From the sequence record MT612989.1: a DNA stretch of 64,000 nucleotides; one strand, 5' to 3'. Each line of letters starts with the position of its first letter. Position 1 is the first letter of the stretch. The notes under the pieces were generated by a model. It made no database searches, was not told the DNA's origin, and saw only the letters and a program-made list of their open reading frames with translations. Of the stretch, positions 2,595 to 60,945 are shown piece by piece. The position numbers were made by a program, and so were the translations under genes.

Positions 2595-3410
2595 TTATAA
2601 ACCGTGAGATTTTTTGAAAGTGTCTAGACGCTTTTCGATTGTGTGAGCTTCTAGTTCAATAATGATGTACCAATCTTTGTATTTACCACGCTGTTCAAAT
2701 GACACTGACTTACAACCTTTGTGAGTAGTATTCATTACGATTTCTGCGATTGCGTCACGAGCAGCTTGACCACGTGCGTTTACTTTCTTAGCAGGCTTAG
2801 GCGCTTCAGCTTTCGGTGCAGGTGCTGCTACAGGTTCAACTGCTTTAGTATTTTCAGCTTTCTTAGCTTCGTGATCTGCTTTGATAGCGTTGAATGTTGA
2901 TGTTGCAACGCAACGAAGTTGACCTTCAGTTTCAGCTTTACGACCTTTCAAGTATAGAGCCTTGATATGTACTGGTTGAAAACGCTTAGTCAAACGATCC
3001 ATTTTCTGAACTACTTCAAGTTCACCTTGAGCGTTTTCGAAGAAAACAACGTACTTGCTATCTACAGCATCAGGGTTAGATACAGTTGAGCAACGCTTTG
3101 CATCGCCACCTAGTTGACGGTGTACACGCTTCCAGATAGCACCGTGACCACGTTCGTTGTAATCAGTGTAAGCAATCGCATGAGCCATTTCGTGAGTGAT
3201 TGTGTTGATTTGCTCTTCTTTAGTACGAGCGTTCAAGAATTCTTCAGAAATACGTAGCGTTTTAGTACGGTAGTTACAATCACCTAGTGCAGCTTTACGT
3301 TTTGAAAATTCAAATGACCAACCTTCTGCAATCAGATCGCGCTTCATCAAGTTGTTACCAGACATAAGGTCGATTGCGATAGCTTTCATTTCTGCTTTAG
3401 TGATTTTCAT
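2595..3410 (-). CDS. SprT-like zinc metalloprotease
   Basis: HEMAH zincin motif followed by HG..W; LGxC..RTKTLRIS upstream. Confidence 0.8.
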   Translation of the reverse strand: MKITKAEMKAIAIDLMSGNNLMKRDLIAEGWSFEFSKRKAALGDCNYRTKTLRISEEFLNARTKEEQINTITHEMAHAIAYTDYNERGHGAIWKRVHRQLGGDAKRCSTVSNPDAVDSKYVVFFENAQGELEVVQKMDRLTKRFQPVHIKALYLKGRKAETEGQLRCVATSTFNAIKADHEAKKAENTKAVEPVAAPAPKAEAPKPAKKVNARGQAARDAIAEIVMNTTHKGCKSVSFEQRGKYKDWYIIIELEAHTIEKRLDTFKKSHGL

Positions 3411-3454
3411 AATGTTCTCTCTTTAAGTAGTTCGTATCTCGTCTTGATGTGTTT

Positions 3455-3487
3455 ATTATCGGGGATTGACGTGTTATTGTCAATCCC
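3455..3487 (-). promoter_or_regulatory. early sigma70-type promoter with overlapping inverted repeat
   Basis: TTGACA-N17-GATAAT; GGGATTGAC/GTCAATCCC inverted repeat contains the -35. Confidence 0.7.
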
Positions 3488-3518
3488 TAAAACTACTTTT
3501 TTCGTGAATTATTTCAAA

Positions 3519-4022
3519 TTATTCACTAATTGACTTCACTTTTTCGATAATTTCAACGATTTCTTTCGCTGAACGATTCGAAAATATGATTGTCGATTTT
3601 TTGCGTCGCTGTACTTCTTTATGCTTTGCTGGGTTTAGATGTCCAAGTTCGCGATCAAGTTCCTTATTTGATAATACACTAGAACGAATCATTACGCGAT
3701 GACTATCAGGCAGTCCAGTAGTCACGTATACATTTAGACCGTGCTCTTCAGAGTCCATACCAGGCTGAGATTCTCGAATCTCCCAAAAATCTGAAGACTC
3801 GCTTTGTAGTTCTGCAAGTAGTTCTTCAGCAGTTGCTTTAGGCTGTGCTTCAGCGCGTACTTTACGTGCTTTCTTCGTCTTAGCAGCTTTCATTGCTTTC
3901 TGACGAAGGTCTGTTAAATAATGACGACGACCTTTCTCATCAACAGCTTGAAAACCGTTTGAGTCTACTGTCATGTTGAAGTAAGCAGCAAGTTGTTCGT
4001 TAGTCAGTGATTGTACATTCAT
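3519..4022 (-). CDS. hypothetical early protein
   Basis: 167 aa ORF with GAGAGA SD downstream of an early promoter. Confidence 0.7.
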   Translation of the reverse strand: MNVQSLTNEQLAAYFNMTVDSNGFQAVDEKGRRHYLTDLRQKAMKAAKTKKARKVRAEAQPKATAEELLAELQSESSDFWEIRESQPGMDSEEHGLNVYVTTGLPDSHRVMIRSSVLSNKELDRELGHLNPAKHKEVQRRKKSTIIFSNRSAKEIVEIIEKVKSISE

Positions 4023-4180: not shown

Positions 4181-5809
4181 ATGATTGGATTTCAACAATT
4201 AAATGAAAACATGAGCGCAACGTACGACTATTATCCGGCTCGCTCGACCAAAGAAAACAAATTCTTTGTGATCGACATGAAAGGCGAAGCCAGAGACATC
4301 GTTGTTTCGTTCACAACTAAAACAAAATCAGATATCGGAAATCGCGGTAAACGTTCTTGGTTCTGTACTGTATCAGCAATGCGCGGCAAAAAAGGCGGTG
4401 TTACTATTCGTGAAATGGGAGATGAACAAAAGCTTCAACAAACTATTGTTAAAGTGGTTCAAGATTTCATGATCAAACGTCGTGCGAATGTCGTTTCAAT
4501 GCGTGTGCAGAAACTAGGTACGGGTAAGATGTTCGACTTGCGCGTTAAAACGTTGTTTAAAAAGCTACGTTACGGCTGTGATACAACTAAGATTATTGGC
4601 GTGGGTGGTGAAGAAATTTCGCAAGATTACAGCTTCTTTATTGTAACCAAACCAGGGTATAATGCCGATAAGCTATTCGAAGCATCTGAAGAAACAATTA
4701 ACGATATTGCGTTAAAAATGTCACTCGAAACTGATATTTCAAGCAAGAAAACGATTATCGTAACTGCCGATGCTGCGTATGACGACTATGAAGATGACGT
4801 ACTAGGTAAATGGGTAGAAGAAAACCCCGCTGCACGTGTTCCAAATGATGTTCTTCAAATGCCTCAATATGAAGCGCGTGTAAGTTCGTCTGTTCGTTCT
4901 CAATTGAATGAAAGCAATGAACATGTTCTTGCTAATGCTGCGAAAGGTTTAATTGATATGAGTTTGAATCTTGAAACTGTGGCAGTTTCATTGAATTCAT
5001 ATATCGCCGAATCGAAGAAGCCTCAAAGCGTTCTGAATAGTATCATGGAATCTCGCTCACGTGCTCATGCAAGTCAGTATGAACGTCTTTCTTTGCAACT
5101 TATGCAGGAAGATTCATTTGCGGGTCTATCGTCACTTACACAAGCGGCTATTGCTAGATACTCCGCGACTCGTTTTTCATGGAAGGTGAATGAAGAGTTA
5201 TTACACGGAACTGGTGTTGATAAAGAATCACAGATTGTCTCACGCATCGACCAAGCGTTTTCTGAAGCTGGTATGATTGCTGGTGGAATGACGTTATATC
5301 GTGGCTGTGAAATGTCAAGTAAACATGTGCGCTCTATTCTTGAATCTGGCTCGTTTGTTTCGACTGCGTTTATCTCAACGTCAATCGACCCTCTTGTTGC
5401 TTGTAAGTTCGTTGAATCAAGCTCTAAGAACATCATTGATTCAACTGCTAAGAATAGTAAATCAGATATGCGTTCTCTGCTTGAGTCAGATAAGAAAATG
5501 AATGTTGTATTCATCATAGAAGCGAGCGGCTTGCCTGTTTTAGCTTCAGGTAAACACGGTATGAAAGACTCAAAAGAGATTATCATCAACCGTAATACGA
5601 TGTTTGAAGCTGACGTTGTTCAAATGTCTGAATACGACGCTGTAATTCGATTGAAAATCAAAGAAGATACGAAGCAAGGTGTATTGTCTGCTTTCAAAAA
5701 GCAAGACCGTTTACACGAGCTTTCAGAAGTAGCTAATTTCATGCGTTCTGTTGATGTAGATGTCGATGCAGATAGACTAACAAAAGAGCGTAGTCCTCTA
5801 ACACCATGA
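4181..5809 (+). CDS. alt: Alt-like NAD:protein ADP-ribosyltransferase
   Basis: C-terminal ART motifs TLYRG, FISTS, xxEIIINR; LNE propeptide; late promoter; position next to gene 30 as in T4. Confidence 0.75.
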   Translation: MIGFQQLNENMSATYDYYPARSTKENKFFVIDMKGEARDIVVSFTTKTKSDIGNRGKRSWFCTVSAMRGKKGGVTIREMGDEQKLQQTIVKVVQDFMIKRRANVVSMRVQKLGTGKMFDLRVKTLFKKLRYGCDTTKIIGVGGEEISQDYSFFIVTKPGYNADKLFEASEETINDIALKMSLETDISSKKTIIVTADAAYDDYEDDVLGKWVEENPAARVPNDVLQMPQYEARVSSSVRSQLNESNEHVLANAAKGLIDMSLNLETVAVSLNSYIAESKKPQSVLNSIMESRSRAHASQYERLSLQLMQEDSFAGLSSLTQAAIARYSATRFSWKVNEELLHGTGVDKESQIVSRIDQAFSEAGMIAGGMTLYRGCEMSSKHVRSILESGSFVSTAFISTSIDPLVACKFVESSSKNIIDSTAKNSKSDMRSLLESDKKMNVVFIIEASGLPVLASGKHGMKDSKEIIINRNTMFEADVVQMSEYDAVIRLKIKEDTKQGVLSAFKKQDRLHELSEVANFMRSVDVDVDADRLTKERSPLTP

Positions 5810-5841: not shown

Positions 5842-6723
5842 TTATCGAATATCTTCTAGTTCATAACCCCAGATATTACTAAAATCTTCTTCTGATTCGA
5901 CGTAATACAATGTATCTTGCTCACATAAAATCATATCACCTGCATCAAGCGCCGCACCTTTTTCACTAATATCAAATGTACGACCTGTTTTAGTGCGAAC
6001 TGTAATATCACCTAGCATTGACAGCCAAATGTCAGCCGAATCTAAGTTATTGAACTTACCACGCGGAGTTGTTGCTTCAATGTGAATAACATCACTCGAT
6101 TTTCGCTCTATGTAAACTCGACCGTGTGGCAATCCAAATCGAATGAAATCTCCGTCGTTGTCTAACCAGAATAACTTAGCCCAAGTGAATGCGTTAGTAT
6201 TTGGGAAAATAACGTACGTTAGTTCTTCTTCTTTGTGAATCCCGTCGTTATGCAGTCTGCGAACTTTCGGTGGGTTATTGTTCTTCAATGTGAAGCTATT
6301 TCCCATGACGTGAACCGTATAGTCCATCTTGTTCGCGTATCGCTCAGCCATACGTTTGTACAGTCGGAAACGTTTGTCTGCATCATTGCGATCTTCATCT
6401 GAGTACGCACTAAACGCAATCTCATCAGGGTTAATCTCAGACGCTTTTTCAAACGTAGCAGCTAGAATCGTACTTAATACTGTCATGGCATCTTTAGGCG
6501 ATCCTTTTGCAAGCGTGTGCGTCCAATTGCCTGTTTCACGATCTTTTCGTTGGAAAGCTACATATATGCTTACACCGCGTGGCGTTTCGCGATCTTGAAT
6601 CGTTGCTAGGTATTGGGTCCCGCCTACTGTGAAACTAGCTTCATTGTGCATAGCATCCCATCTATATGGCACTGGTCGGTCGAACGCTTCAATTAACGTT
6701 TCTCCATGTTCAAAAATGATCAT
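5842..6723 (-). CDS. late hypothetical protein, candidate internal head protein (AFDRP domain)
   Basis: TATAAATA upstream; LIE|AFDRP N-terminus; N-domain paralogous to the C-domain of 51066..51986. Confidence 0.7.
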   Translation of the reverse strand: MIIFEHGETLIEAFDRPVPYRWDAMHNEASFTVGGTQYLATIQDRETPRGVSIYVAFQRKDRETGNWTHTLAKGSPKDAMTVLSTILAATFEKASEINPDEIAFSAYSDEDRNDADKRFRLYKRMAERYANKMDYTVHVMGNSFTLKNNNPPKVRRLHNDGIHKEEELTYVIFPNTNAFTWAKLFWLDNDGDFIRFGLPHGRVYIERKSSDVIHIEATTPRGKFNNLDSADIWLSMLGDITVRTKTGRTFDISEKGAALDAGDMILCEQDTLYYVESEEDFSNIWGYELEDIR

Positions 6724-6747: not shown

Positions 6748-6755
6748 TATTTATA
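6748..6755 (-). promoter_or_regulatory. late promoter TATAAATA
   Basis: exact consensus 25 nt upstream of ATG 6723. Confidence 0.8.
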
Positions 6756-6782
6756 CGCAAAAAGGGGCATAAGCCCCCTTTA

Positions 6783-8120
6783 TTAACCTTTGAACCCGCT
6801 CATTTCTTCAAGCGCATTCGCAACATCTTTGTCATCACGGAATTGCACGAAAATAGGCAAGAAACAAGACCATGTTTCTTTATTGCGTGCGCGTGTGATT
6901 GCGTTGTAGTTGATTTCAACAATCATACCGATTACTTCATCACGACGTTCCCAAATTTCAGCACGCTGTTTATCACTGAAGCCACTACCGACTTTAGTAA
7001 TCAACATACCGCAAGCTGAACGAAGAAGAAGAGCACCCATTTTGCCTTTGTTCTTCTTGTCACCTTCGATTACTTCAATGATCTCTAAATCACCATCGTG
7101 AACTTCTTTGTATTTCACAAGTGATTTGCTTCGCTTGTTTTCCCAGAGTGCATCTGGGTCTTTCAAGATGATACCTTCTAGACCTTGAGCAACGTACTGA
7201 TTGTAGATTTCAGATGCTTGTTCTTTTGTAGAAACAGTCTGCCACGGAATCGGTTCGATGATACCACGTGCTTTAATAGCAACATCTGCAAGAATCTGTT
7301 TACGTTTACTGTACGGCATGTTCAATTCATTCGACTTACCGAAATAAACGTCTTCAGGGATGATATCCCACACTTGAAATACAATGTCAGCCTGTTCTTT
7401 CGGTGTGATTGTACCTTTGCTTGCTTTGTTGACAATGCCATTACCAGTCGAACGGTCTTCAACCTCATGTAAACCGTTTGGCGCGTACACAAGCTCACCG
7501 TCGATAACAAAGCCGTTTACACCCATTTCAGTCAAGCCTTTCTCAACTTTGACTAGACCTTGATAGCGTTTACCGTTACGCGATGTAAGAGTAATGTTAC
7601 CATCTAAGTCAACATGAGCGAAACAACGAGCACCATCAGCTTTCAATTCAGCGTATGCGATTTTAGTTAGAATCGCGTCAATTAGTTTGTCGTTCTTCGG
7701 GCTTGCAAGCATTTGAGGTTGTTCTGGAATCAGTTTCTTCCAAACTTTGTTTGCAGTACCACCCGTACAACCAGTTCGAAGGTCTTTCAATATAACACGA
7801 CGAATCACTTCCGCGTCGTCTTCAGAAACTGAAGCGAGTATACGAGCAACAAAATCTTGTGCAGAATGACCGCGCACTTGATTCACAACCAACGCACTAA
7901 ACACTTGCTCTAGTGCATCTTCTAGTTCGGTATATTCATGCACATATGCTTCACCTGCATTCACTTCAGGCAGTTTCTTCATATTAAACTGATACGTAGG
8001 TGTGTATGCAAGCTCAAATACACGCTTTAGCAATTCATTGTCTTTTTCAGACTTCAGGATTGCTTCTTTTTCAGTGCGTTTAGTCGTTGCTGCTAGTTTA
8101 TTCAGGATTGGTAGAATCAT
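6783..8120 (-). CDS. 30: ATP-dependent DNA ligase gp30
   Basis: ELKADGAR adenylation motif, DGEL, EGIILK, VGSGFSD, FLPIF motifs. Confidence 0.97.
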   Translation of the reverse strand: MILPILNKLAATTKRTEKEAILKSEKDNELLKRVFELAYTPTYQFNMKKLPEVNAGEAYVHEYTELEDALEQVFSALVVNQVRGHSAQDFVARILASVSEDDAEVIRRVILKDLRTGCTGGTANKVWKKLIPEQPQMLASPKNDKLIDAILTKIAYAELKADGARCFAHVDLDGNITLTSRNGKRYQGLVKVEKGLTEMGVNGFVIDGELVYAPNGLHEVEDRSTGNGIVNKASKGTITPKEQADIVFQVWDIIPEDVYFGKSNELNMPYSKRKQILADVAIKARGIIEPIPWQTVSTKEQASEIYNQYVAQGLEGIILKDPDALWENKRSKSLVKYKEVHDGDLEIIEVIEGDKKNKGKMGALLLRSACGMLITKVGSGFSDKQRAEIWERRDEVIGMIVEINYNAITRARNKETWSCFLPIFVQFRDDKDVANALEEMSGFKG

Positions 8121-24893: not shown

Positions 24894-25373
24894 TTATTCG
24901 AAATGTCTGAACTTCTTCAGCTTTTTCTTTTTCTTTTTCTTACCGATAGTTTCAGGACCTGCATTAGTTACAGCACCAGTCGTTTCACCAGAAGCAATCG
25001 ACTCTGGTGAGCTACTACCGTCACCCGCATCACCTGCAACAACAGCTTCTTCGACTCGAATACACTCTTTCGCGAAATCTTCAGATAACCCGTATTCTTT
25101 TGCAAGCTCAATCAGCAACAAATAAGACGCGCCATAATCAAGTGCTGTTTTACCACCTGGTAATGCACCAACCATGCGCTTGATATTTCTCACAGTAACA
25201 TGAAACATCGTCCAGTTACTTTTCTCTTGTGCAGTTACAGGGTCACGCAACTTCTTACCATCTGCGTCGATGATACCCATTCGATATGCTTCCCAACGTT
25301 CAAAACGAAGATGAAGCAAACGAGACAGACGAAGAGCATAAAAACCATCTGCACCACGTTTAGCTACACTCAT
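24894..25373 (-). CDS. T4 gp30.3-like conserved protein
   Basis: F..WEAY..GIID.DG..L...TxQEK...T.FH..V.NIKR; acidic then basic tail. Confidence 0.7.
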   Translation of the reverse strand: MSVAKRGADGFYALRLSRLLHLRFERWEAYRMGIIDADGKKLRDPVTAQEKSNWTMFHVTVRNIKRMVGALPGGKTALDYGASYLLLIELAKEYGLSEDFAKECIRVEEAVVAGDAGDGSSSPESIASGETTGAVTNAGPETIGKKKKKKKLKKFRHFE

Positions 25374-34166: not shown

Positions 34167-34883
34167 TTAAGCTTTCTTTGCAGCACGCTTGCGTTTTGGC
34201 TTTACGGGCTCATCTTCAACTTCTTCATCTTCAGGGTCGACCTTTAGTTTGCGAAGCTCTTCAGCTACGCGCTCTTGAATCTGTTCTTCAAGTTGAGATT
34301 CAATGTCACCTGCAAGTTGAGCTTCAGCTTCTTTCATTTCATCTTCGAACTTCTTCGACATTTCTTGAAGACGTTCTGTAACCTCTTCTGGCGTCAGCCA
34401 CAAGTCTTGGTTATGGTTGATGATTTCGTCGATCTCGTCAGCATCAAAGAACGGTTCATAAAGAAGACCACATACGCGGTTTAAATGCTCTTCGTGAGAT
34501 TTAGCTTGTTTCAACGTGTCTGGCATTTTACCAATTTGACCGCCGCTCGATGTATGGAACATGAACGTTGCAAATGGGGATACGTGCCAACCATTACAAG
34601 CTAAGAAAATCATTGTACCTGCGCTGCACACTTCACCCTCTGCGCACGCGATGACTGCACCTGCTTTAGATTGCATAATTGCATCACAAATTTGACATGC
34701 AGCATAGAAGTTACCACCAGGTGTATTCAAGTGCAAGTAAATCACGTCTGTTTCGGACGCCGTATGCAGAATTTGAAGCATTTCTTCATAATCATTCGGC
34801 TCTTCAATCGCACCGTTGATGTAGAAATCATGACGTACAGAACCAGCCCCTGCGTACCATCCAATGTTATTTTTAAAAATCAT
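34167..34883 (-). CDS. ClpP-like serine protease
   Basis: LNTPGG, VCSAGT (Ser), FMFH (His). Confidence 0.8.
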   Translation of the reverse strand: MIFKNNIGWYAGAGSVRHDFYINGAIEEPNDYEEMLQILHTASETDVIYLHLNTPGGNFYAACQICDAIMQSKAGAVIACAEGEVCSAGTMIFLACNGWHVSPFATFMFHTSSGGQIGKMPDTLKQAKSHEEHLNRVCGLLYEPFFDADEIDEIINHNQDLWLTPEEVTERLQEMSKKFEDEMKEAEAQLAGDIESQLEEQIQERVAEELRKLKVDPEDEEVEDEPVKPKRKRAAKKA

Positions 34884-50402: not shown

Positions 50403-50431
50403 AAAAAGGGTGACTTCGGTCGCCCTTTTTT
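50403..50431 (+). terminator. intrinsic terminator
   Basis: GGGTGAC-TTCG-GTCGCCC followed by a U tract. Confidence 0.9.
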
Positions 50432-50439
50432 CGTTTGCG

Positions 50440-50447
50440 TCTAAATA
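50440..50447 (+). promoter_or_regulatory. late promoter variant TCTAAATA
   Basis: 23 nt upstream of ATG 50470. Confidence 0.7.
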
Positions 50448-50469: not shown

Positions 50470-51063
50470 ATGATAGAATTTTTAACAGAAATGGACAAAG
50501 CTAAACAAACCGGTAGATGGGCTCAATTTAAAGCAGCAACATCGGGTTCGAAAGGTGAAGTTAAAAAGCGTATGCAGCGCAAAGGTGGCTTCTGGGGTGT
50601 GTTTGCAGGTTTGATCGCGAGTGCGACAGCATCGGGTGAACTTAGAAAGCACAATAAGTCACTAGAAGACCATAAGCTAAGAATGGAGCGTGCAGCAGTG
50701 AACACAATTCACAGTCTGAATGTTCTTAAAGACGTAATCGAGCTTGAACGTCCTCGTGACGAAGTAATGAAAGCTGCAAAGCGTTTAAAGCTTGATAACA
50801 TGGAAATGAAGAAATACGCAACCGAAATGATTCGTGTCGTAGATGAATACAAGCGTGTTCATGACGAAGATAAGAAGGCAGGTGCGTTTCGTTTTAATGT
50901 GAAAGAATACGACCGTCATGATTTTCGTGAGATTTACCATCACTTGAACATGATTGAAGATAGCACATTTTACGTCGATAAAGCAGCGTCATCGGCTATG
51001 ACTGGCGATACTGAATACGCAATTCGTATGATTCGCAATATTACAAACGCAGCAACGAGGTAA
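50470..51063 (+). CDS. late hypothetical protein, candidate internal head protein
   Basis: MIEFLTE| propeptide; Gly-rich hydrophobic segment; helical. Confidence 0.7.
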   Translation: MIEFLTEMDKAKQTGRWAQFKAATSGSKGEVKKRMQRKGGFWGVFAGLIASATASGELRKHNKSLEDHKLRMERAAVNTIHSLNVLKDVIELERPRDEVMKAAKRLKLDNMEMKKYATEMIRVVDEYKRVHDEDKKAGAFRFNVKEYDRHDFREIYHHLNMIEDSTFYVDKAASSAMTGDTEYAIRMIRNITNAATR

Positions 51064-51065
51064 TA

Positions 51066-51986
51066 ATGAGCATAATTTTTGAACGCGCTACATTGAAAAC
51101 TCGAAAAGGTAGTGCAGTAAAACGCAGCAAGTGGGGCGTGGGTAAAGACATTGGCGGTTCATTGTATGTTCACATTGACTATATCCCAGATGAGTTCAAG
51201 CAAATGGTTGCTGATGCTCGTACTCAAGTATCAATTGCAAACTCACAATTTACTCCGAATGTAGTACGAATTGACTACAAGAAAGGTGGAGTTGCTTTCT
51301 ACGATTCAGTTGAATTTGATACTGTACAAGAACCAGCCGCGGGTATGATGATTACTTACAGAGACGGTGTTGTTTCTAAACCACGTCAAGTAAACCAAAT
51401 ATGGCATCACAAATGGTTGTGGGTTGGTGATGATTATAGAGGGTTTGATACTTCTCAGTCATATGACCGCTCGGCTCAGTGGCTAGATCATGACGATATC
51501 CCATTTGCCAAGATCGGTAATAAGAAGACATGGCGTGAATGGCTGTCTTCGGTTAACTTGACTGAGGCATTTGACCGACCATCTAAAATACACTGGGTTG
51601 AGAAGAGAATTCACAGTTGGGGTGGTACGTTTACGGTAAACGGGGACGAATACGCGATTGCAATACAGTATCAAGAACAAAACGATGCATGGGAACTTGT
51701 GTTCTTAGGTATGAACAGTTCGGGTGATTATACTTACAGCGCAACAGGTCGAGGCAATATGTATGGTGTGTTTGCGACAGTAATGAGCGGTATGCGTGAA
51801 TTTATAGACGAGCGAGAGCCAGAAACAATTTATTTCAGTGCAGAGCGAGATATAAAAAACGACAGTGATTCGAGAATAAAACTATACAATCGTTTAGTAA
51901 AACGATATGCTGATACATTACCGAATTACACATATAAAACGGTCGAAGGGAAAGTCTCGACTAAAACATATTTCATTAGAAAATAA
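51066..51986 (+). CDS. two-domain late protein: PT-associated-like domain plus AFDRP domain
   Basis: VGK..LYVH, FDT..EP, IWHHK..V..DY; internal LTE|AFDRP at residues 165-172. Confidence 0.7.
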   Translation: MSIIFERATLKTRKGSAVKRSKWGVGKDIGGSLYVHIDYIPDEFKQMVADARTQVSIANSQFTPNVVRIDYKKGGVAFYDSVEFDTVQEPAAGMMITYRDGVVSKPRQVNQIWHHKWLWVGDDYRGFDTSQSYDRSAQWLDHDDIPFAKIGNKKTWREWLSSVNLTEAFDRPSKIHWVEKRIHSWGGTFTVNGDEYAIAIQYQEQNDAWELVFLGMNSSGDYTYSATGRGNMYGVFATVMSGMREFIDEREPETIYFSAERDIKNDSDSRIKLYNRLVKRYADTLPNYTYKTVEGKVSTKTYFIRK

Positions 51987-51993
51987 GAGAGCA

Positions 51994-52092
51994 ATGAAAA
52001 CATTTCAAGATTTTCATGAATTCAGCAGATTTCGTACCTGCTTGATAATTAAAAAGCGCATTTTTTGCGCTTTTTTTGTATCTATTGGTTGA
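51994..52092 (+). pseudogene. remnant or mini-gene beginning with a T4-type capsid targeting sequence (MKTFQDFHE)
   Basis: frame reads through the terminator; shifted frame ends SADFVPA-TGA-TAA just before the terminator. Confidence 0.35.
52051..52077 (+). terminator. intrinsic terminator
   Basis: AAAAAGCGCA-TTTT-TGCGCTTTTTT. Confidence 0.8.
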
Positions 52093-59806: not shown

Positions 59807-59814
59807 TATTTATA
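59807..59814 (-). promoter_or_regulatory. late promoter TATAAATA for gp22
   Basis: exact consensus. Confidence 0.8.
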
Positions 59815-60451
59815 AGAGAGTTTTTAACGTTTCCGCTAGTTTCGCAAATTCAGCGTCATTACTTTCTGTAATTTCTTCTGTTTTTACTGACTTAGCAGCT
59901 TCATTTGACTCAGTTACTGGTTTAACGTAAGCAGCAGGTGCACTAGGACCCCACACTACATCAACGCCTACTGTAAGACGGAAATCTTGCACTTCGTTGA
60001 TGCCGTCAACTTGCTTAACTGAACCAAGACCTCTTGAACTCACGCCCGGTACCCAACCACCTTCGATCAGACCTCGAACTATTTGTCCCTTCGGTGTATT
60101 TAGTACGATAGCTTTACCCATTACGTTATCGCCGTCCCACCACAACTCAGTAATTCGAATCGCAGCTTCAGCGGGGTCAACGTTTGAACGACTTGGGTGA
60201 TTAAGCTCGCCCAACGCTTGATTCGTGTTGACTTGTTCTTTCATGTATTTAGATACAGCATTTTCCATGACTTTTTTCGGGTATCGACGACCATTACGGT
60301 TTACGACATTCGATTGCATGAAAATACCTTCGATGTACAAGTCACCGCCCTTTTCCGTGGGCATTTTCGCTTCAACAAGAGGCTTTTCACCGAAGCTATC
60401 AGCGCAACCGCTAGATAAACCCCAGTCTTCAATTAAGAGTTGTAATTCCAT
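59810..60451 (-). CDS. 21: prohead protease gp21
   Basis: LYIEGIFMQ..VVNRNGR.YPK, LGELNHP, GVSSRGLGS, VDVVWGPSAP. Confidence 0.98.
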   Translation of the reverse strand: MELQLLIEDWGLSSGCADSFGEKPLVEAKMPTEKGGDLYIEGIFMQSNVVNRNGRRYPKKVMENAVSKYMKEQVNTNQALGELNHPSRSNVDPAEAAIRITELWWDGDNVMGKAIVLNTPKGQIVRGLIEGGWVPGVSSRGLGSVKQVDGINEVQDFRLTVGVDVVWGPSAPAAYVKPVTESNEAAKSVKTEEITESNDAEFAKLAETLKTLL

Positions 60452-60453
60452 AA

Positions 60454-60945
60454 TTAAAGCCCCATTTGTTGACGCTTCTTCATCGACTTCTTACGCAATT
60501 TTTTTGCTTTACGATCTGCACTAGTGCCTTTCATACGCTTGCGTGTTTTAGCCGCTTTTCGCGCTGTTTTTTGTCTCTTCGATTTACTTAGACCAGTTGT
60601 TTGAGTCGCTTTTCGCGCTCTGGTTTTTCGGTCTTTGCGCTTCGTAATTAAACTACCGCCAGCTTTTTTGTTAGCAATAGAAACTTGCTTAACTAGCTTT
60701 TCGGAAAGTTCGAATTTTTCACACGCTTCATCGATTGATAACCCGTCTTCAAGAGAACTTAGCACGTCAAGTACAACTTCAACTTCGTTCGTGATGTCTT
60801 TATTGCTGTGAACGCCGATATCTTCAGCTTCAGCAAACGCTTTGATAGTGTCGCTGATATCTTGGCGATCTAACTGACCACCAAGAACTGCTTCTACCAA
60901 ATCTTCGACGATTTTCTCTTGAACGGCTTCGGAAATGAACTTCAT
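60454..60945 (-). CDS. 68: prohead core protein gp68
   Basis: acidic N-half, Arg/Lys-rich C-half (KTRARKA..TTGLSK..R); position. Confidence 0.88.
   Translation of the reverse strand: MKFISEAVQEKIVEDLVEAVLGGQLDRQDISDTIKAFAEAEDIGVHSNKDITNEVEVVLDVLSSLEDGLSIDEACEKFELSEKLVKQVSIANKKAGGSLITKRKDRKTRARKATQTTGLSKSKRQKTARKAAKTRKRMKGTSADRKAKKLRKKSMKKRQQMGL

What the first reader, a model, noticed from the sequence alone, without database searches (positions are those of the whole stretch)
51558..51986. Internal gp21-type site LTE|AFDRP: a polyprotein whose second half is a paralog of 5842..6723
Seen: this domain (EAFDRP..W..FTVNG..Y..V..T..PETIYFSA..D..NDSDSR..LY.R...RYA) aligns with the N-terminal ~130 aa of the gene at 5842-6723 (EAFDRP..W..FTVGG..Y..PDEIAFSA..D.NDADKR..LY.R...RYA). 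In one protein the domain follows the propeptide (LIE|AFDRP); in the other it follows an internal LTE|. Established: T4 gp21 cuts after (I/L)-x-E. Inference: a shuffled cargo module, released in the capsid as a separate protein with the same mature N-terminus but partnered with different effector domains.
Basis: partly seen in the sequence, partly recalled or inferred. Interest (0 to 1): 0.75.

Follow-up and report, generated by a model that had tools for sequence, protein, structure and literature searches.

The report
Protease-cut two-part phage head protein
A hypothetical gene of a T4-like Vibrio phage joins an unknown domain to a swappable module related to the front end of T4's injected Alt enzyme, and the joint carries the motif at which the T4 head protease cuts Alt, so it is probably cut in two inside the capsid; this is not yet shown.

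Summary
The window is Vibrio phage vB_ValM_R11Z (KVP40-like). Residues 165-300 of the 306-aa ORF 51066..51986(+) align with residues 10-147 of the 293-aa ORF 5842..6723(-): 31% identity, BLASTP E=1e-12.

The shared ~140-aa module is not private to these genes. A profile search found it in 6001 protein clusters, often 2-6 copies per protein. It is related to Pfam DUF6934 and has a GNAT-like predicted fold. By profile and fold comparison it matches the N-terminal domain of T4-type Alt ADP-ribosyltransferases.

Each aligned copy starts [L/I/V]-x-E-[A/L/S/V]-[F/L]-[D/N]; the Glu is present in 288 of 288 copies. T4 Alt starts MELITE|LFD, and published work shows gp21 cuts it at ITE-6.

The window encodes a gp21 homologue, and its capsid protein keeps LNE|A where T4 gp23 has LTE65|A. 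Between R11Z and KVP40, DNA similarity stops three codons after LTE and resumes after the gene, so the module was exchanged as a cassette.

Cleavage at LTE167 and packaging in the capsid are therefore well supported by comparison. They remain unproven: I found no virion proteome for this phage group. The module looks more like a common chassis than like cargo.

The parts
51066..51986 (+). ORF A, 306 aa: the proposed two-part precursor (record locus tag vBValMR11Z_189; phrog_16075).
   Evidence: an intact ortholog is present in about 30 Vibrio phage genomes
51066..51083 (+). Short leader MSIIFE. It contains a second candidate site, IFE6. It resembles the start of ORF B (MIIFE) and is conserved in KVP40, nt-1 and D482 as x-[I/L]-I-F-E.
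   Evidence: cleavage here is inferred
51084..51566 (+). N-terminal domain, residues 7-167 (18.5 kDa, pI 9.05). Function unknown. By tblastn it is found only in 51 Vibrio phage records, at 63-100% identity.
   Evidence: no hit in Pfam, NCBIfam or PDB sequences
51558..51566 (+). Codons L165-T166-E167, the proposed gp21-type cleavage site (cut after E167, before A168).
   Evidence: SSVNLTE is invariant in all four orthologs compared. It is homologous in position to T4 Alt ITE-6. It is the same tripeptide and P1' residue as T4 gp23 LTE65|A.
51567..51983 (+). The module, residues 168-306 (16.2 kDa, pI 7.0). It is DUF6934-related and Alt-N-like, with a GNAT-like predicted fold.
51576..52021 (+). 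Cassette exchanged between R11Z/nt-1 (type 1, AFDRP...) and KVP40/D482 (type 2, SLDKP...). DNA similarity to KVP40 ends at 51575 and resumes at 52022.
50470..51063 (+). Upstream gene of 197 aa, ending 2 nt before ORF A and apparently in the same transcription unit. Its start MIEFLTE is invariant in three phages, and the product after that would have pI 9.7. It is a candidate further head-internal protein.
   Evidence: inference only
50440..50447 (+). TCTAAATA, one mismatch from the T4 late promoter TATAAATA, just after a G+C-rich hairpin with a T run (about 50408-50431). The arrangement is conserved in KVP40 and D482. The same variant lies 41 nt upstream of a tail-fibre gene.
   Evidence: promoter function not shown, and the scan tool did not flag the hairpin
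52051..52075 (+). Terminator-like hairpin that closes the two-gene unit.
5842..6723 (-). ORF B, 293 aa (phrog_6387): leader, then module, then an unrelated C-terminal domain.
6688..6723 (-). ORF B leader MIIFEHGETLIE, with candidate sites IFE5 and LIE12 (LIE codons 6688-6696).
   Evidence: the ValKK3 allele keeps MIIFEGYDALFE followed by AFDRA
6274..6687 (-). ORF B module, residues 13 to about 150.
5845..6273 (-). ORF B C-terminal domain, residues about 151-293 (pI 4.8). Function unknown. Found in 48 Vibrio phage records and highly variable.
6748..6755 (-). Exact T4-type late promoter motif TATAAATA, 25 nt upstream of the ORF B start and preceded by a hairpin. It is conserved in ValKK3.
   Evidence: The other five exact copies in the window lie upstream of the gp24, gp23, gp22, helicase (my reading: UvsW-like) and ssDNA-binding-protein (gp32-like) genes.
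4181..5809 (+). Alt-like ADP-ribosyltransferase, 542 aa. Residues 5-109 are a divergent third copy of the module, and QLNE9 aligns to the P3-P1 positions of the site.
59810..60451 (-). gp21 homologue, the prohead core serine protease proposed to make the cuts.
   Evidence: Pfam Peptidase_S77, 328 bits; 53% identical to T4 gp21

Best explanation
ORF A is a precursor of two head-internal proteins. I propose that it is made late in infection and built into the prohead core. The phage's gp21-type protease would then cut it after E167 (LTE|AFDRP) and probably also after E6 (IFE|RA). This would free a basic 18.5-kDa protein of unknown function (residues 7-167) and a 16-kDa module (residues 168-306).

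The module belongs to a very large phage family that is related to Pfam DUF6934, has a GNAT-like predicted fold, and is homologous to the N-terminal domain of T4-type Alt. Nearly every copy starts with a built-in protease site, [L/I/V]-x-E followed by [A/L/S/V]-[F/L]-[D/N]. ORF B and the neighbouring Alt-like ADP-ribosyltransferase carry the same module directly behind short leaders. The module and its site therefore behave as a movable unit that joins different partner domains to the capsid-packaging and processing route.

Shown by tool results or published experiment: the homology; the motif's position and near-invariance; the gp21 homologue; the conserved gp23 site; the late promoter of ORF B; the cassette exchange; and, from papers, cleavage of T4 Alt at the equivalent motif.

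Inferred: that ORF A is packaged, that it is cut at LTE167 and IFE6, that both products are kept and injected, and what either product does.
For: (1) ORF A and ORF B are homologous over the module.

(2) Family size and the motif. An exhaustive profile search found 6001 clusters at E<=1e-3 and 2915 at E<=1e-10, many with 2-6 copies. In 288 aligned copies the P1 Glu is present in 288 of 288. P3 is L, I or V in 93%. The positions upstream of P3 are not conserved. Only one other module position is equally invariant, a Tyr. In tandem arrays the motif sits exactly at module boundaries.

(3) Link to Alt. The Alt-like protein in the window matches the module profile over residues 5-109, with LNE9 on the site (E=2e-4). 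A profile of nine T4-type Alt N-termini matches the module profile (hhalign probability 86.8%, E=4e-6). The predicted module structure (pLDDT 84) matches predicted structures of Alt proteins of phiAS5, SP18, HY03, MK-13, CF1, Henu6 and Melville at query-normalised TM 0.5-0.74.

(4) Experimental anchor. All nine Alt proteins start with [L/I/V]-x-E-[V/L]-[F/L/M]-[D/E/N]. T4 Alt is cut by gp21 at ITE-6 and LTE-619 (PMC5694885; X15811 note). The gp21 motif is L/I-X-E and was first found at a Glu-Ala bond (PMC9026906).

(5) The machinery is present. The window has a Peptidase_S77 protease. R11Z gp23 has LNE|A aligned to T4 LTE65|A.

(6) In the predicted structure the residues SSVNLTEA have pLDDT below 50, and confidence is high from about F9 onward. 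The invariant Glu is therefore not explained by the fold.

(7) ORF B has an exact late promoter motif, as do the gp22, gp23 and gp24 genes.

(8) A 141-aa stand-alone homologue in phage PA5oct is annotated as a structural protein found by ESI-MS/MS.

(9) The cassette was exchanged with its left breakpoint at the site.

(10) Two pattern scans of 185,579 bacterial and archaeal species genomes found no copy.
Against: No virion proteome of any KVP40-like phage was found, so packaging and cleavage of ORF A are untested.

The only late-promoter-like motif upstream of ORF A's unit is the one-mismatch variant TCTAAATA.

[L/I]-x-E is common: it occurs near the N-terminus of 28 of 92 window proteins.

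The Glu could be needed for the module's own function. Low model confidence at a chain end is also weak evidence.

A quarter of the copies have Val at P3, which is outside the classical T4 motif. One subfamily has QLAR[W/E] in place of the motif.

ORF A's leader MSIIFE does not resemble the T4 IPIII-type targeting sequence.

In ORF A the module is C-terminal, the reverse of its position in Alt.

The phage type of the metagenomic carriers could not be determined.

The sequence link to T4 Alt itself is moderate. hmmsearch with T4 Alt alone was not significant.
Confidence: 0.6

Rival explanations
1. ORF A is packaged in the head but stays in one piece. Only a short N-terminal peptide, or nothing, is removed, because the LTE167 joint is hidden between two packed domains. 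On this view the L-x-E is inherited with the module from ancestors in which it lay behind a leader.
For: In T4 many L/I-x-E triplets are not cut, and accessibility decides. The full-length model was too poor (pLDDT 39) to show a free linker. ORF A also has VQE89 and IDE249, which are unlikely to be cut.
Against: SSVNLTE is invariant across orthologs whose N-domains are 74-97% identical, while the sequence after it was replaced. In tandem arrays every internal copy keeps the Glu although no leader is involved. T4 Alt is cut at the non-N-terminal site LTE-619.
Confidence: 0.2
2. The motif is a working part of a GNAT-like enzyme or ligand-binding domain and has nothing to do with proteolysis. ORF A and ORF B would then be ordinary cytoplasmic phage proteins.
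For: All of the strongest PDB fold matches are GNAT acetyltransferases. The module keeps a G-x-G-D turn before the long helix and an invariant R..LY, which resembles GNAT motifs. That comparison with GNAT motifs rests on my own knowledge. The related Pfam family DUF6934 is of unknown function.
Against: Conservation begins abruptly at P3, and the Glu lies in the segment modelled as disordered. The same motif in T4 Alt is a proven cut site. ORF B has a late promoter like the head genes. The PA5oct homologue is in virions. ORF B lacks the second Gly of the G-x-G turn. No Pfam GNAT model hits the module itself.
Confidence: 0.12
3. This is a variant of the main model that differs on what the module is for. 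The module would be the capsid-targeting or retention handle, a folded counterpart of the 10-residue T4 targeting sequence. The cut would simply release the real payload, the N-domain of ORF A, from its handle. In ORF B and Alt the handle would stay attached.
For: How Alt is targeted is unknown, and its propeptide is only 6 residues long. The module is the one element common to proteins with many different payload domains.
Against: A handle that binds the conserved scaffold should itself be conserved. Yet the two module alleles of ORF A are only about 25% identical, and ORF B differs by 55% between near-identical genomes. Proteins that consist only of three tandem modules would be handles with no payload.
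Confidence: 0.3

Closest known systems
T4 Alt (gpAlt), the head-packaged and injected ADP-ribosyltransferase, with its N-terminal domain and gp21 processing at ITE-6 and LTE-619
   Same: The domain is homologous by profile-profile and fold comparison. The start motif is the same, [L/I]-x-E followed by [L/V/A]-F-D. The genome neighbourhood is the same for ORF B, which lies between alt and the DNA ligase gene. T4 also has a partial duplicate of this first part of alt (alt.-1/alt.-2). Alt is cut at a second, non-N-terminal site too.
   Different: In ORF A the module is at the C-terminal end and the site is internal, so cleavage would give two proteins of similar size rather than remove a short peptide. 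There is no ADP-ribosyltransferase domain. Sequence identity to T4 Alt is undetectable without profiles.
[quoted passage not shown]
   Same: A short leader ends in L/I-x-E and is removed by gp21. The mature parts vary greatly between related phages. They are thought to be injected anti-host proteins (PMC3012670; PMC9026906). Some stand-alone module proteins on viral contigs have leaders very like the T4 IP leader, for example MKTFNQYNKYIIE.
   Different: The conserved element here is a folded domain of about 140 residues that lies after the cut, not only the 10-residue peptide before it. The leaders of ORF A and ORF B (M(S)IIFE...) do not resemble the T4 targeting sequence.
Processed paralogous head, inner-body and ejection proteins of giant phages (phiKZ, 201phi2-1, SPN3US)
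   Same: These are families of diverged paralogues in one genome. They are cut after Glu at a three-residue motif by a gp21-related protease, sometimes at several sites, and some paralogues share identical N-terminal propeptides (PMC5694885; PMC9026906).
   Different: The P3 preference differs (S/A/G-x-E or A-x-E). The protein families are unrelated. No mobile module with a built-in site has been described for them in the papers I read.
Polyvalent proteins of phages and conjugative elements (Iyer et al. 2017, PMC5512222)
   Same: They combine many effector domains in one polypeptide that is predicted to be packaged and delivered with the DNA. Relatives of the module occur in proteins of 500-2000 aa together with GNAT, ParB-like, deaminase and zeta-toxin-like domains.
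   Different: [quoted passage not shown] In the passages I searched it does not describe this module or a Glu-specific site at its start. ORF A has only two domains.
Pfam DUF6934 (PF22028)
   Same: It is the only Pfam model that hits the module. Multi-copy relatives score well above its threshold, at 38-67 bits against a cut-off of 27.
   Different: ORF A (24.2 bits) and ORF B (16.3 bits) are below the threshold. Matches to the Pfam model never cover the cut-site motif. The family has no known function, and the library holds a single paper that mentions it, once.

Membership tests
Substrates of the T4-type prohead protease gp21 (head-internal, processed proteins) | The same genome encodes a gp21-type (Peptidase_S77) protease. 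| tested here: met
   Window 59810..60451(-): Peptidase_S77, 328 bits; 53% identity to T4 gp21.
Substrates of the T4-type prohead protease gp21 (head-internal, processed proteins) | An L/I-x-E triplet lies at the proposed site, and the protease's specificity is conserved in this phage. | tested here: met
   LTE165-167 followed by Ala. R11Z gp23 has LNE|A aligned to the T4 gp23 site LTE65|A. The motif definition comes from PMC9026906.
Substrates of the T4-type prohead protease gp21 (head-internal, processed proteins) | Late transcription together with the head genes. | tested here: inconclusive
   ORF B has an exact TATAAATA 25 nt upstream, like the gp22, gp23 and gp24 genes. The unit holding ORF A has only the variant TCTAAATA, which is conserved in KVP40 and D482 and also precedes a tail-fibre gene.
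Substrates of the T4-type prohead protease gp21 (head-internal, processed proteins) | The protein is found in purified virions with the new N-terminus. | not testable with these tools
   No virion proteome of a KVP40-like phage is in the searchable library. The only indirect support is the PA5oct stand-alone homologue annotated 'structural protein, ESI-MS/MS'.
T4 internal proteins carrying the IPIII-type capsid targeting sequence | An N-terminal leader of about 10 residues similar to the T4 IPII/IPIII leader. | tested here: not met
   The leaders MSIIFE (ORF A) and MIIFEHGETLIE (ORF B) do not resemble it. IP-like leaders do occur on stand-alone relatives such as L005.
Alt N-terminal domain family (T4 gpAlt; precomputed Pfam PF26846 on T4 Alt) | Sequence-profile and fold similarity to the N-terminal domain of T4-type Alt. 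| tested here: met
   hhalign probability 86.8%, E=4.2e-6, Alt 70-169 against module 55-146. Foldseek against BFVD matches seven Alt-type proteins at TM 0.5-0.74. The window's own Alt-like N-terminus matches the module profile at E=2e-4. T4 Alt alone against the profile is not significant.
Alt N-terminal domain family (T4 gpAlt; precomputed Pfam PF26846 on T4 Alt) | A match to the Pfam model PF26846. | not testable with these tools
   PF26846 is listed for T4 Alt in precomputed annotations but is absent from the local Pfam copy.
Pfam DUF6934 (PF22028) | A score at or above the gathering threshold of 27 bits. | tested here: not met
   ORF A 24.2 bits (E=3.6e-5) and ORF B 16.3 bits. Relatives reached through the module profile score 38-67 bits, so the relation holds at superfamily level.
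GNAT acetyltransferase superfamily | The GNAT fold. | tested here: inconclusive
   All of the strongest PDB Foldseek hits are GNAT enzymes, but TM is only 0.43-0.47 and E about 1e-3. The model has four strands, helix, strand, helix and two strands, and lacks the usual N-terminal helices.
GNAT acetyltransferase superfamily | An acetyl-CoA pyrophosphate-binding loop (Q/R-x-x-G-x-G/A), and a match to GNAT sequence models. | tested here: inconclusive
   The family consensus has T-G-x-G-D before the long helix and an invariant R..LY. ORF B lacks the second Gly. No Pfam GNAT model hits the module. Activity was not tested.
Polyvalent proteins (Iyer et al. 2017) | Two to fifteen recognised effector domains of that set in one polypeptide encoded by a phage or conjugative element. 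| tested here: not met
   ORF A and ORF B have no recognisable effector domain. Larger relatives with GNAT, ParB-like or deaminase domains come closer.

The most novel reading that the evidence does not exclude
The Alt-N-like/DUF6934-like module with its invariant leading Glu is a general 'cut here' cassette of T4-superfamily phages. It would define a large, undescribed class of polyproteins processed by the prohead protease, with up to six modules per protein and thousands of protein clusters. Through these, the phages would load, separate and diversify the proteins they inject with their DNA. The site-coding sequence would double as the recombination anchor for swapping cassettes.
Probability: 0.35. 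Interest if true: 0.8.

Novelty: new variant of a known kind. Interest (0 to 1): 0.6.

Why it matters
Proteins injected with phage DNA are the first weapons to reach the host cell, yet outside T4 few are known. How T4 Alt is targeted to the head is still an open question (PMC5694885). If the module and its site mark packaged, processed proteins, then two or three 'hypothetical' genes in every KVP40-like phage become candidate injected effectors, and so do thousands of metagenomic proteins. The module would also give a sequence signature for finding such proteins. It would make the evolution of the Alt N-terminal domain testable. It would add a natural example of gene-cassette exchange at a protease-site-coding sequence. 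Finally, it could extend the T4 'expression-packaging-processing' approach for loading foreign proteins into capsids.

Tried and rejected
**Searches and models that gave nothing**
- A word-index search with the 146-aa module alone found nothing because of its length filter. With the full-length query it found only nt-1 and one metagenomic protein.
- Single-sequence AlphaFold of the whole ORF A was unusable (pLDDT 39), so whether the joint is exposed in the full protein is unknown.
- The partner domains had no hit in Pfam, NCBIfam or PDB sequences.
- hmmsearch and BLASTP of T4 Alt alone against the module or the window's Alt-like N-terminus were not significant. The link appeared only with a nine-sequence Alt profile and by fold comparison.
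- Pfam PF26846, listed on T4 Alt, is not in the local library.

**Context of the metagenomic carriers**
- Three carriers gave phage-like neighbourhoods with no T4 marker genes. Seven viral contigs likewise showed no T4 marker genes. Their phage type is therefore unknown.
- Two scans of bacterial and archaeal genomes found no relative. Two alignments were too divergent to make search patterns. I could therefore not test whether cellular DUF6934 proteins lack the motif.

**Literature**
- No virion proteome of a KVP40-like phage was found, and the KVP40 genome paper is not held.

**Ideas rejected**
- The module is not made by internal translation initiation: there is no in-frame start codon near the joint.
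- ORF A is not an assembly or fusion artefact: it is intact in about 30 genomes.
- An N-terminal L-x-E is not diagnostic on its own: 28 of 92 window proteins have one.
Full report
**Source of the window.** The window is identical to bases 62001-126000 of Vibrio phage vB_ValM_R11Z (MT612989.1). This is a KVP40-like member of Schizotequatrovirus, family Straboviridae, and so a relative of T4. The finding concerns two genes annotated 'hypothetical protein'. ORF A is 51066..51986(+), 306 aa. ORF B is 5842..6723(-), 293 aa.

**Check of the observation.** The coordinates are exact: 51558-51566 encode L165-T166-E167 of ORF A. BLASTP aligns ORF A residues 165-300 with ORF B residues 10-147 at 31% identity, E=1e-12. 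Among all window reading frames each module finds only the other. Each gene's PHROG family hits the other gene. ORF B has a 12-residue leader, MIIFEHGETLIE, before AFDRP. ORF A has 167 residues before the same AFDRP.

**What the shared module is.**
- tblastn finds the module in 63 phage records, 52 from Vibrio and 11 from Pseudomonas. In phage PA5oct it is a 141-aa stand-alone protein annotated as a structural protein found by ESI-MS/MS.
- Viral metagenome contigs show it alone behind short leaders, some of them very like the T4 internal-protein leader. They also show it inside proteins of 300-2000 aa with GNAT or ParB-like domains.
- A 10-sequence profile searched exhaustively against 1.84 billion representative proteins gave 6001 clusters at E<=1e-3 and 2915 at E<=1e-10. 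Many have 2-6 copies per protein.
- Those multi-copy relatives score above threshold on Pfam DUF6934. ORF A and ORF B score just below it. The searchable literature says essentially nothing about DUF6934.
- AlphaFold with a 15-sequence alignment gave a confident model (pLDDT 84, pTM 0.78): four strands, helix, strand, helix, two strands. Its strongest PDB matches are all GNAT acetyltransferases, at modest TM of about 0.45.
- Its matches among predicted viral structures are much better, at TM 0.6-0.8. They include proteins of the T4-superfamily jumbo phage Atu_ph07, a zeta-toxin-domain protein, a deaminase-domain protein with two copies and a ParB/sulfiredoxin protein. They also include the Alt ADP-ribosyltransferases of phiAS5, SP18, HY03, MK-13, CF1, Henu6 and Melville.

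**The motif at the start of the module.**
- Across 288 aligned copies the residue corresponding to E167 is Glu in 288 of 288.
- Two positions before it stands L (106), I (88) or V (70).
- After it come [A/L/S/V], [F/L], [D/N], x, P, Y.
- The positions upstream are not conserved.
- Only one other position of the module is equally invariant, a Tyr in the R..LY helix.
- In tandem arrays the motif sits exactly at the boundary between consecutive modules.
- In the model the residues SSVNLTEA have pLDDT below 50, and confidence is high from about the Phe onward. The fold does not explain why the Glu never changes.
- One divergent subfamily has QLAR[W/E] instead of the motif.

**Link to an experimentally known cut.**
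- The Alt-like ADP-ribosyltransferase next to ORF B (4181..5809) matches the module profile over residues 5-109, with QLNE9 on the site (E=2e-4).
- T4 Alt, read from the T4 record, starts MELITE then LFD. Alt proteins of eight other T4-like genera start with the same pattern, for example MELLNE|VFDE and MSEQLNE|LFDK.
- A profile of these nine N-termini matches the module profile (hhalign probability 86.8%, E=4.2e-6). This agrees with the fold matches.
- Published work states that gp21 removes six residues from Alt at ITE-6 and 63 residues at LTE-619 (PMC5694885).
- gp21 cuts after Glu in L/I-X-E, a specificity first seen at a Glu-Ala bond (PMC9026906).
- The LTE|A of ORF A is thus the homologue, in position, of a proven gp21 site.

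**Is the machinery present?** The window encodes a Peptidase_S77 protease (328 bits), the gp22-type scaffold and gp23. The protease is 53% identical to T4 gp21. R11Z gp23 has LNE|A aligned with the T4 gp23 maturation site LTE65|A (the 65-residue propeptide is stated in PMC9958956).

**Expression.**
- The exact T4 late-promoter motif TATAAATA occurs six times in the window, all on the minus strand. Four copies lie just upstream of the gp24, gp23, gp22 and ORF B genes. The ORF B copy is 25 nt before the start codon.
- The Alt-like gene has CATAAATA upstream.
- ORF A follows a 197-aa gene by 2 nt. The pair lies between a hairpin with a T run and a terminator-like hairpin.
- The pair is preceded by TCTAAATA. 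That variant is conserved in KVP40 and D482 and also precedes a tail-fibre gene.
- Late expression is therefore well supported for ORF B and only plausible for ORF A.

**Shuffling.**
- KVP40.0371 is 96-97% identical to ORF A up to ...SSVNLTE and about 25% identical after it.
- At the DNA level, similarity stops at 51575 and resumes at 52022, so the cassette 51576-52021 was replaced.
- The two module types do not follow the N-domain tree. R11Z and nt-1 share type 1. KVP40 and the much more distant D482 share type 2.
- ORF B differs by about 55% in protein sequence between R11Z and ValKK3, although the flanks are 92-97% identical in DNA.
- ORF B lies between alt and the DNA ligase gene. T4 has small genes at that locus, including alt.-1/alt.-2, annotated as an old duplication of the first part of alt.
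- Such variability resembles that of the T-even internal proteins, which share only a targeting sequence (PMC3012670; PMC9026906).

**Interpretation.** The most likely reading (confidence 0.6) is that ORF A is a head-internal precursor. The gp21 homologue would cut it after E167, and probably after E6, into an 18.5-kDa basic protein and a 16-kDa module. ORF B and the Alt-like protein would lose short leaders at the same motif. The homology, the motif statistics, the protease, the gp23 site, the ORF B promoter and the cassette swap are shown. Packaging, cleavage, retention and function are inferred.

**Rivals.**
- The protein may be packaged but not cut internally (0.2).
- The motif may serve a GNAT-like function, with the proteins cytoplasmic (0.12).
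- Within the main model, whether the module is a packaging handle or an effector in its own right is open. Its rapid divergence argues against a simple handle.

**Limits.**
- No KVP40-group virion proteome was found.
- The partner domains have no detectable relatives of known function.
- The phage type of the metagenomic carriers is undetermined.
- No copies were found in 185,579 bacterial and archaeal species genomes, but only by pattern-limited scans.

**Novelty.** gp21 processing, targeting leaders and Alt cleavage are known. The papers I could search do not describe this module as a mobile unit with a built-in Glu site, its tandem arrays, or a two-part precursor such as ORF A. I rate it a new variant of a known kind, with interest 0.6.

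Noticed in passing
window 4181..5809 (+), residues 511-516: The Alt-like ADP-ribosyltransferase has LHE513 and LSE516 about 26-29 residues from its C-terminus. This could parallel the C-terminal gp21 cut of T4 Alt at LTE-619.
   Followed up: no
window 50470..51063 (+): The 197-aa gene just upstream of ORF A starts MIEFLTE in R11Z, KVP40 and D482. The product after that would be very basic (pI 9.7). It may be another processed head-internal protein. It has no family of known function (phrog_16422).
   Followed up: partly
window 6748-6790 (-) and 50403-50447 (+): Both module genes are preceded by a G+C-rich hairpin with a T run, followed at once by a late-promoter-like octamer. The arrangement is conserved in ValKK3, KVP40 and D482. 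It recalls the promoter-stem-loop units reported to mediate module shuffling in T4-like phages (PMC4122927, title and abstract only).
   Followed up: partly
window 5842..6723 (-) versus ValKK3 (L030:1739-2626): The whole ORF B gene is about 45% identical in protein between two phages that are otherwise about 99% identical here. It is a hypervariable locus next to alt.
   Followed up: partly
window 60454..60945 (-): This gene is annotated in the record as a second 'prohead core protein protease'. It has no Peptidase_S77 hit and aligns (41%) with T4 gp68, a core protein, so it is probably misnamed.
   Followed up: partly
L021:3266-3451 (T4 alt.-1) and 3066-3269 (alt.-2): T4 alt.-1 starts MELITELFD, like Alt. 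The record calls alt.-1/alt.-2 an old duplication of the first part of alt. The module has therefore also been duplicated in T4.
   Followed up: partly
P0099, P0100 (metagenomic proteins with 5-6 module copies): This subfamily carries QLAR[W/E] where the other copies have [L/I/V]-x-E. It may reflect a different protease specificity, or no processing.
   Followed up: no
P0009, P0013, P0019 (metagenomic proteins of 426-460 aa): These proteins consist of three tandem modules and nothing else. That is hard to explain if the module is only a handle for other domains.
   Followed up: no
L013 (KVP40 copy in IMG/VR), ORF 2974-3822: Searches suggest a module gene in KVP40 that is distinct from the ORF A and ORF B orthologs, starting MKFSEYQNELTE followed by AFDRP and joined to a different C-terminal domain. 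tblastn counts three module places in R11Z too; I did not locate the third, and apart from the weak Alt-like match no further copy was found inside the window.
   Followed up: partly
window 34167..34883 (-) and 24894..25373 (-): The record annotates a ClpP-like protease subunit among the replication genes, and a 159-aa 'major capsid protein' between the primase and helicase genes. The second annotation looks doubtful.
   Followed up: no
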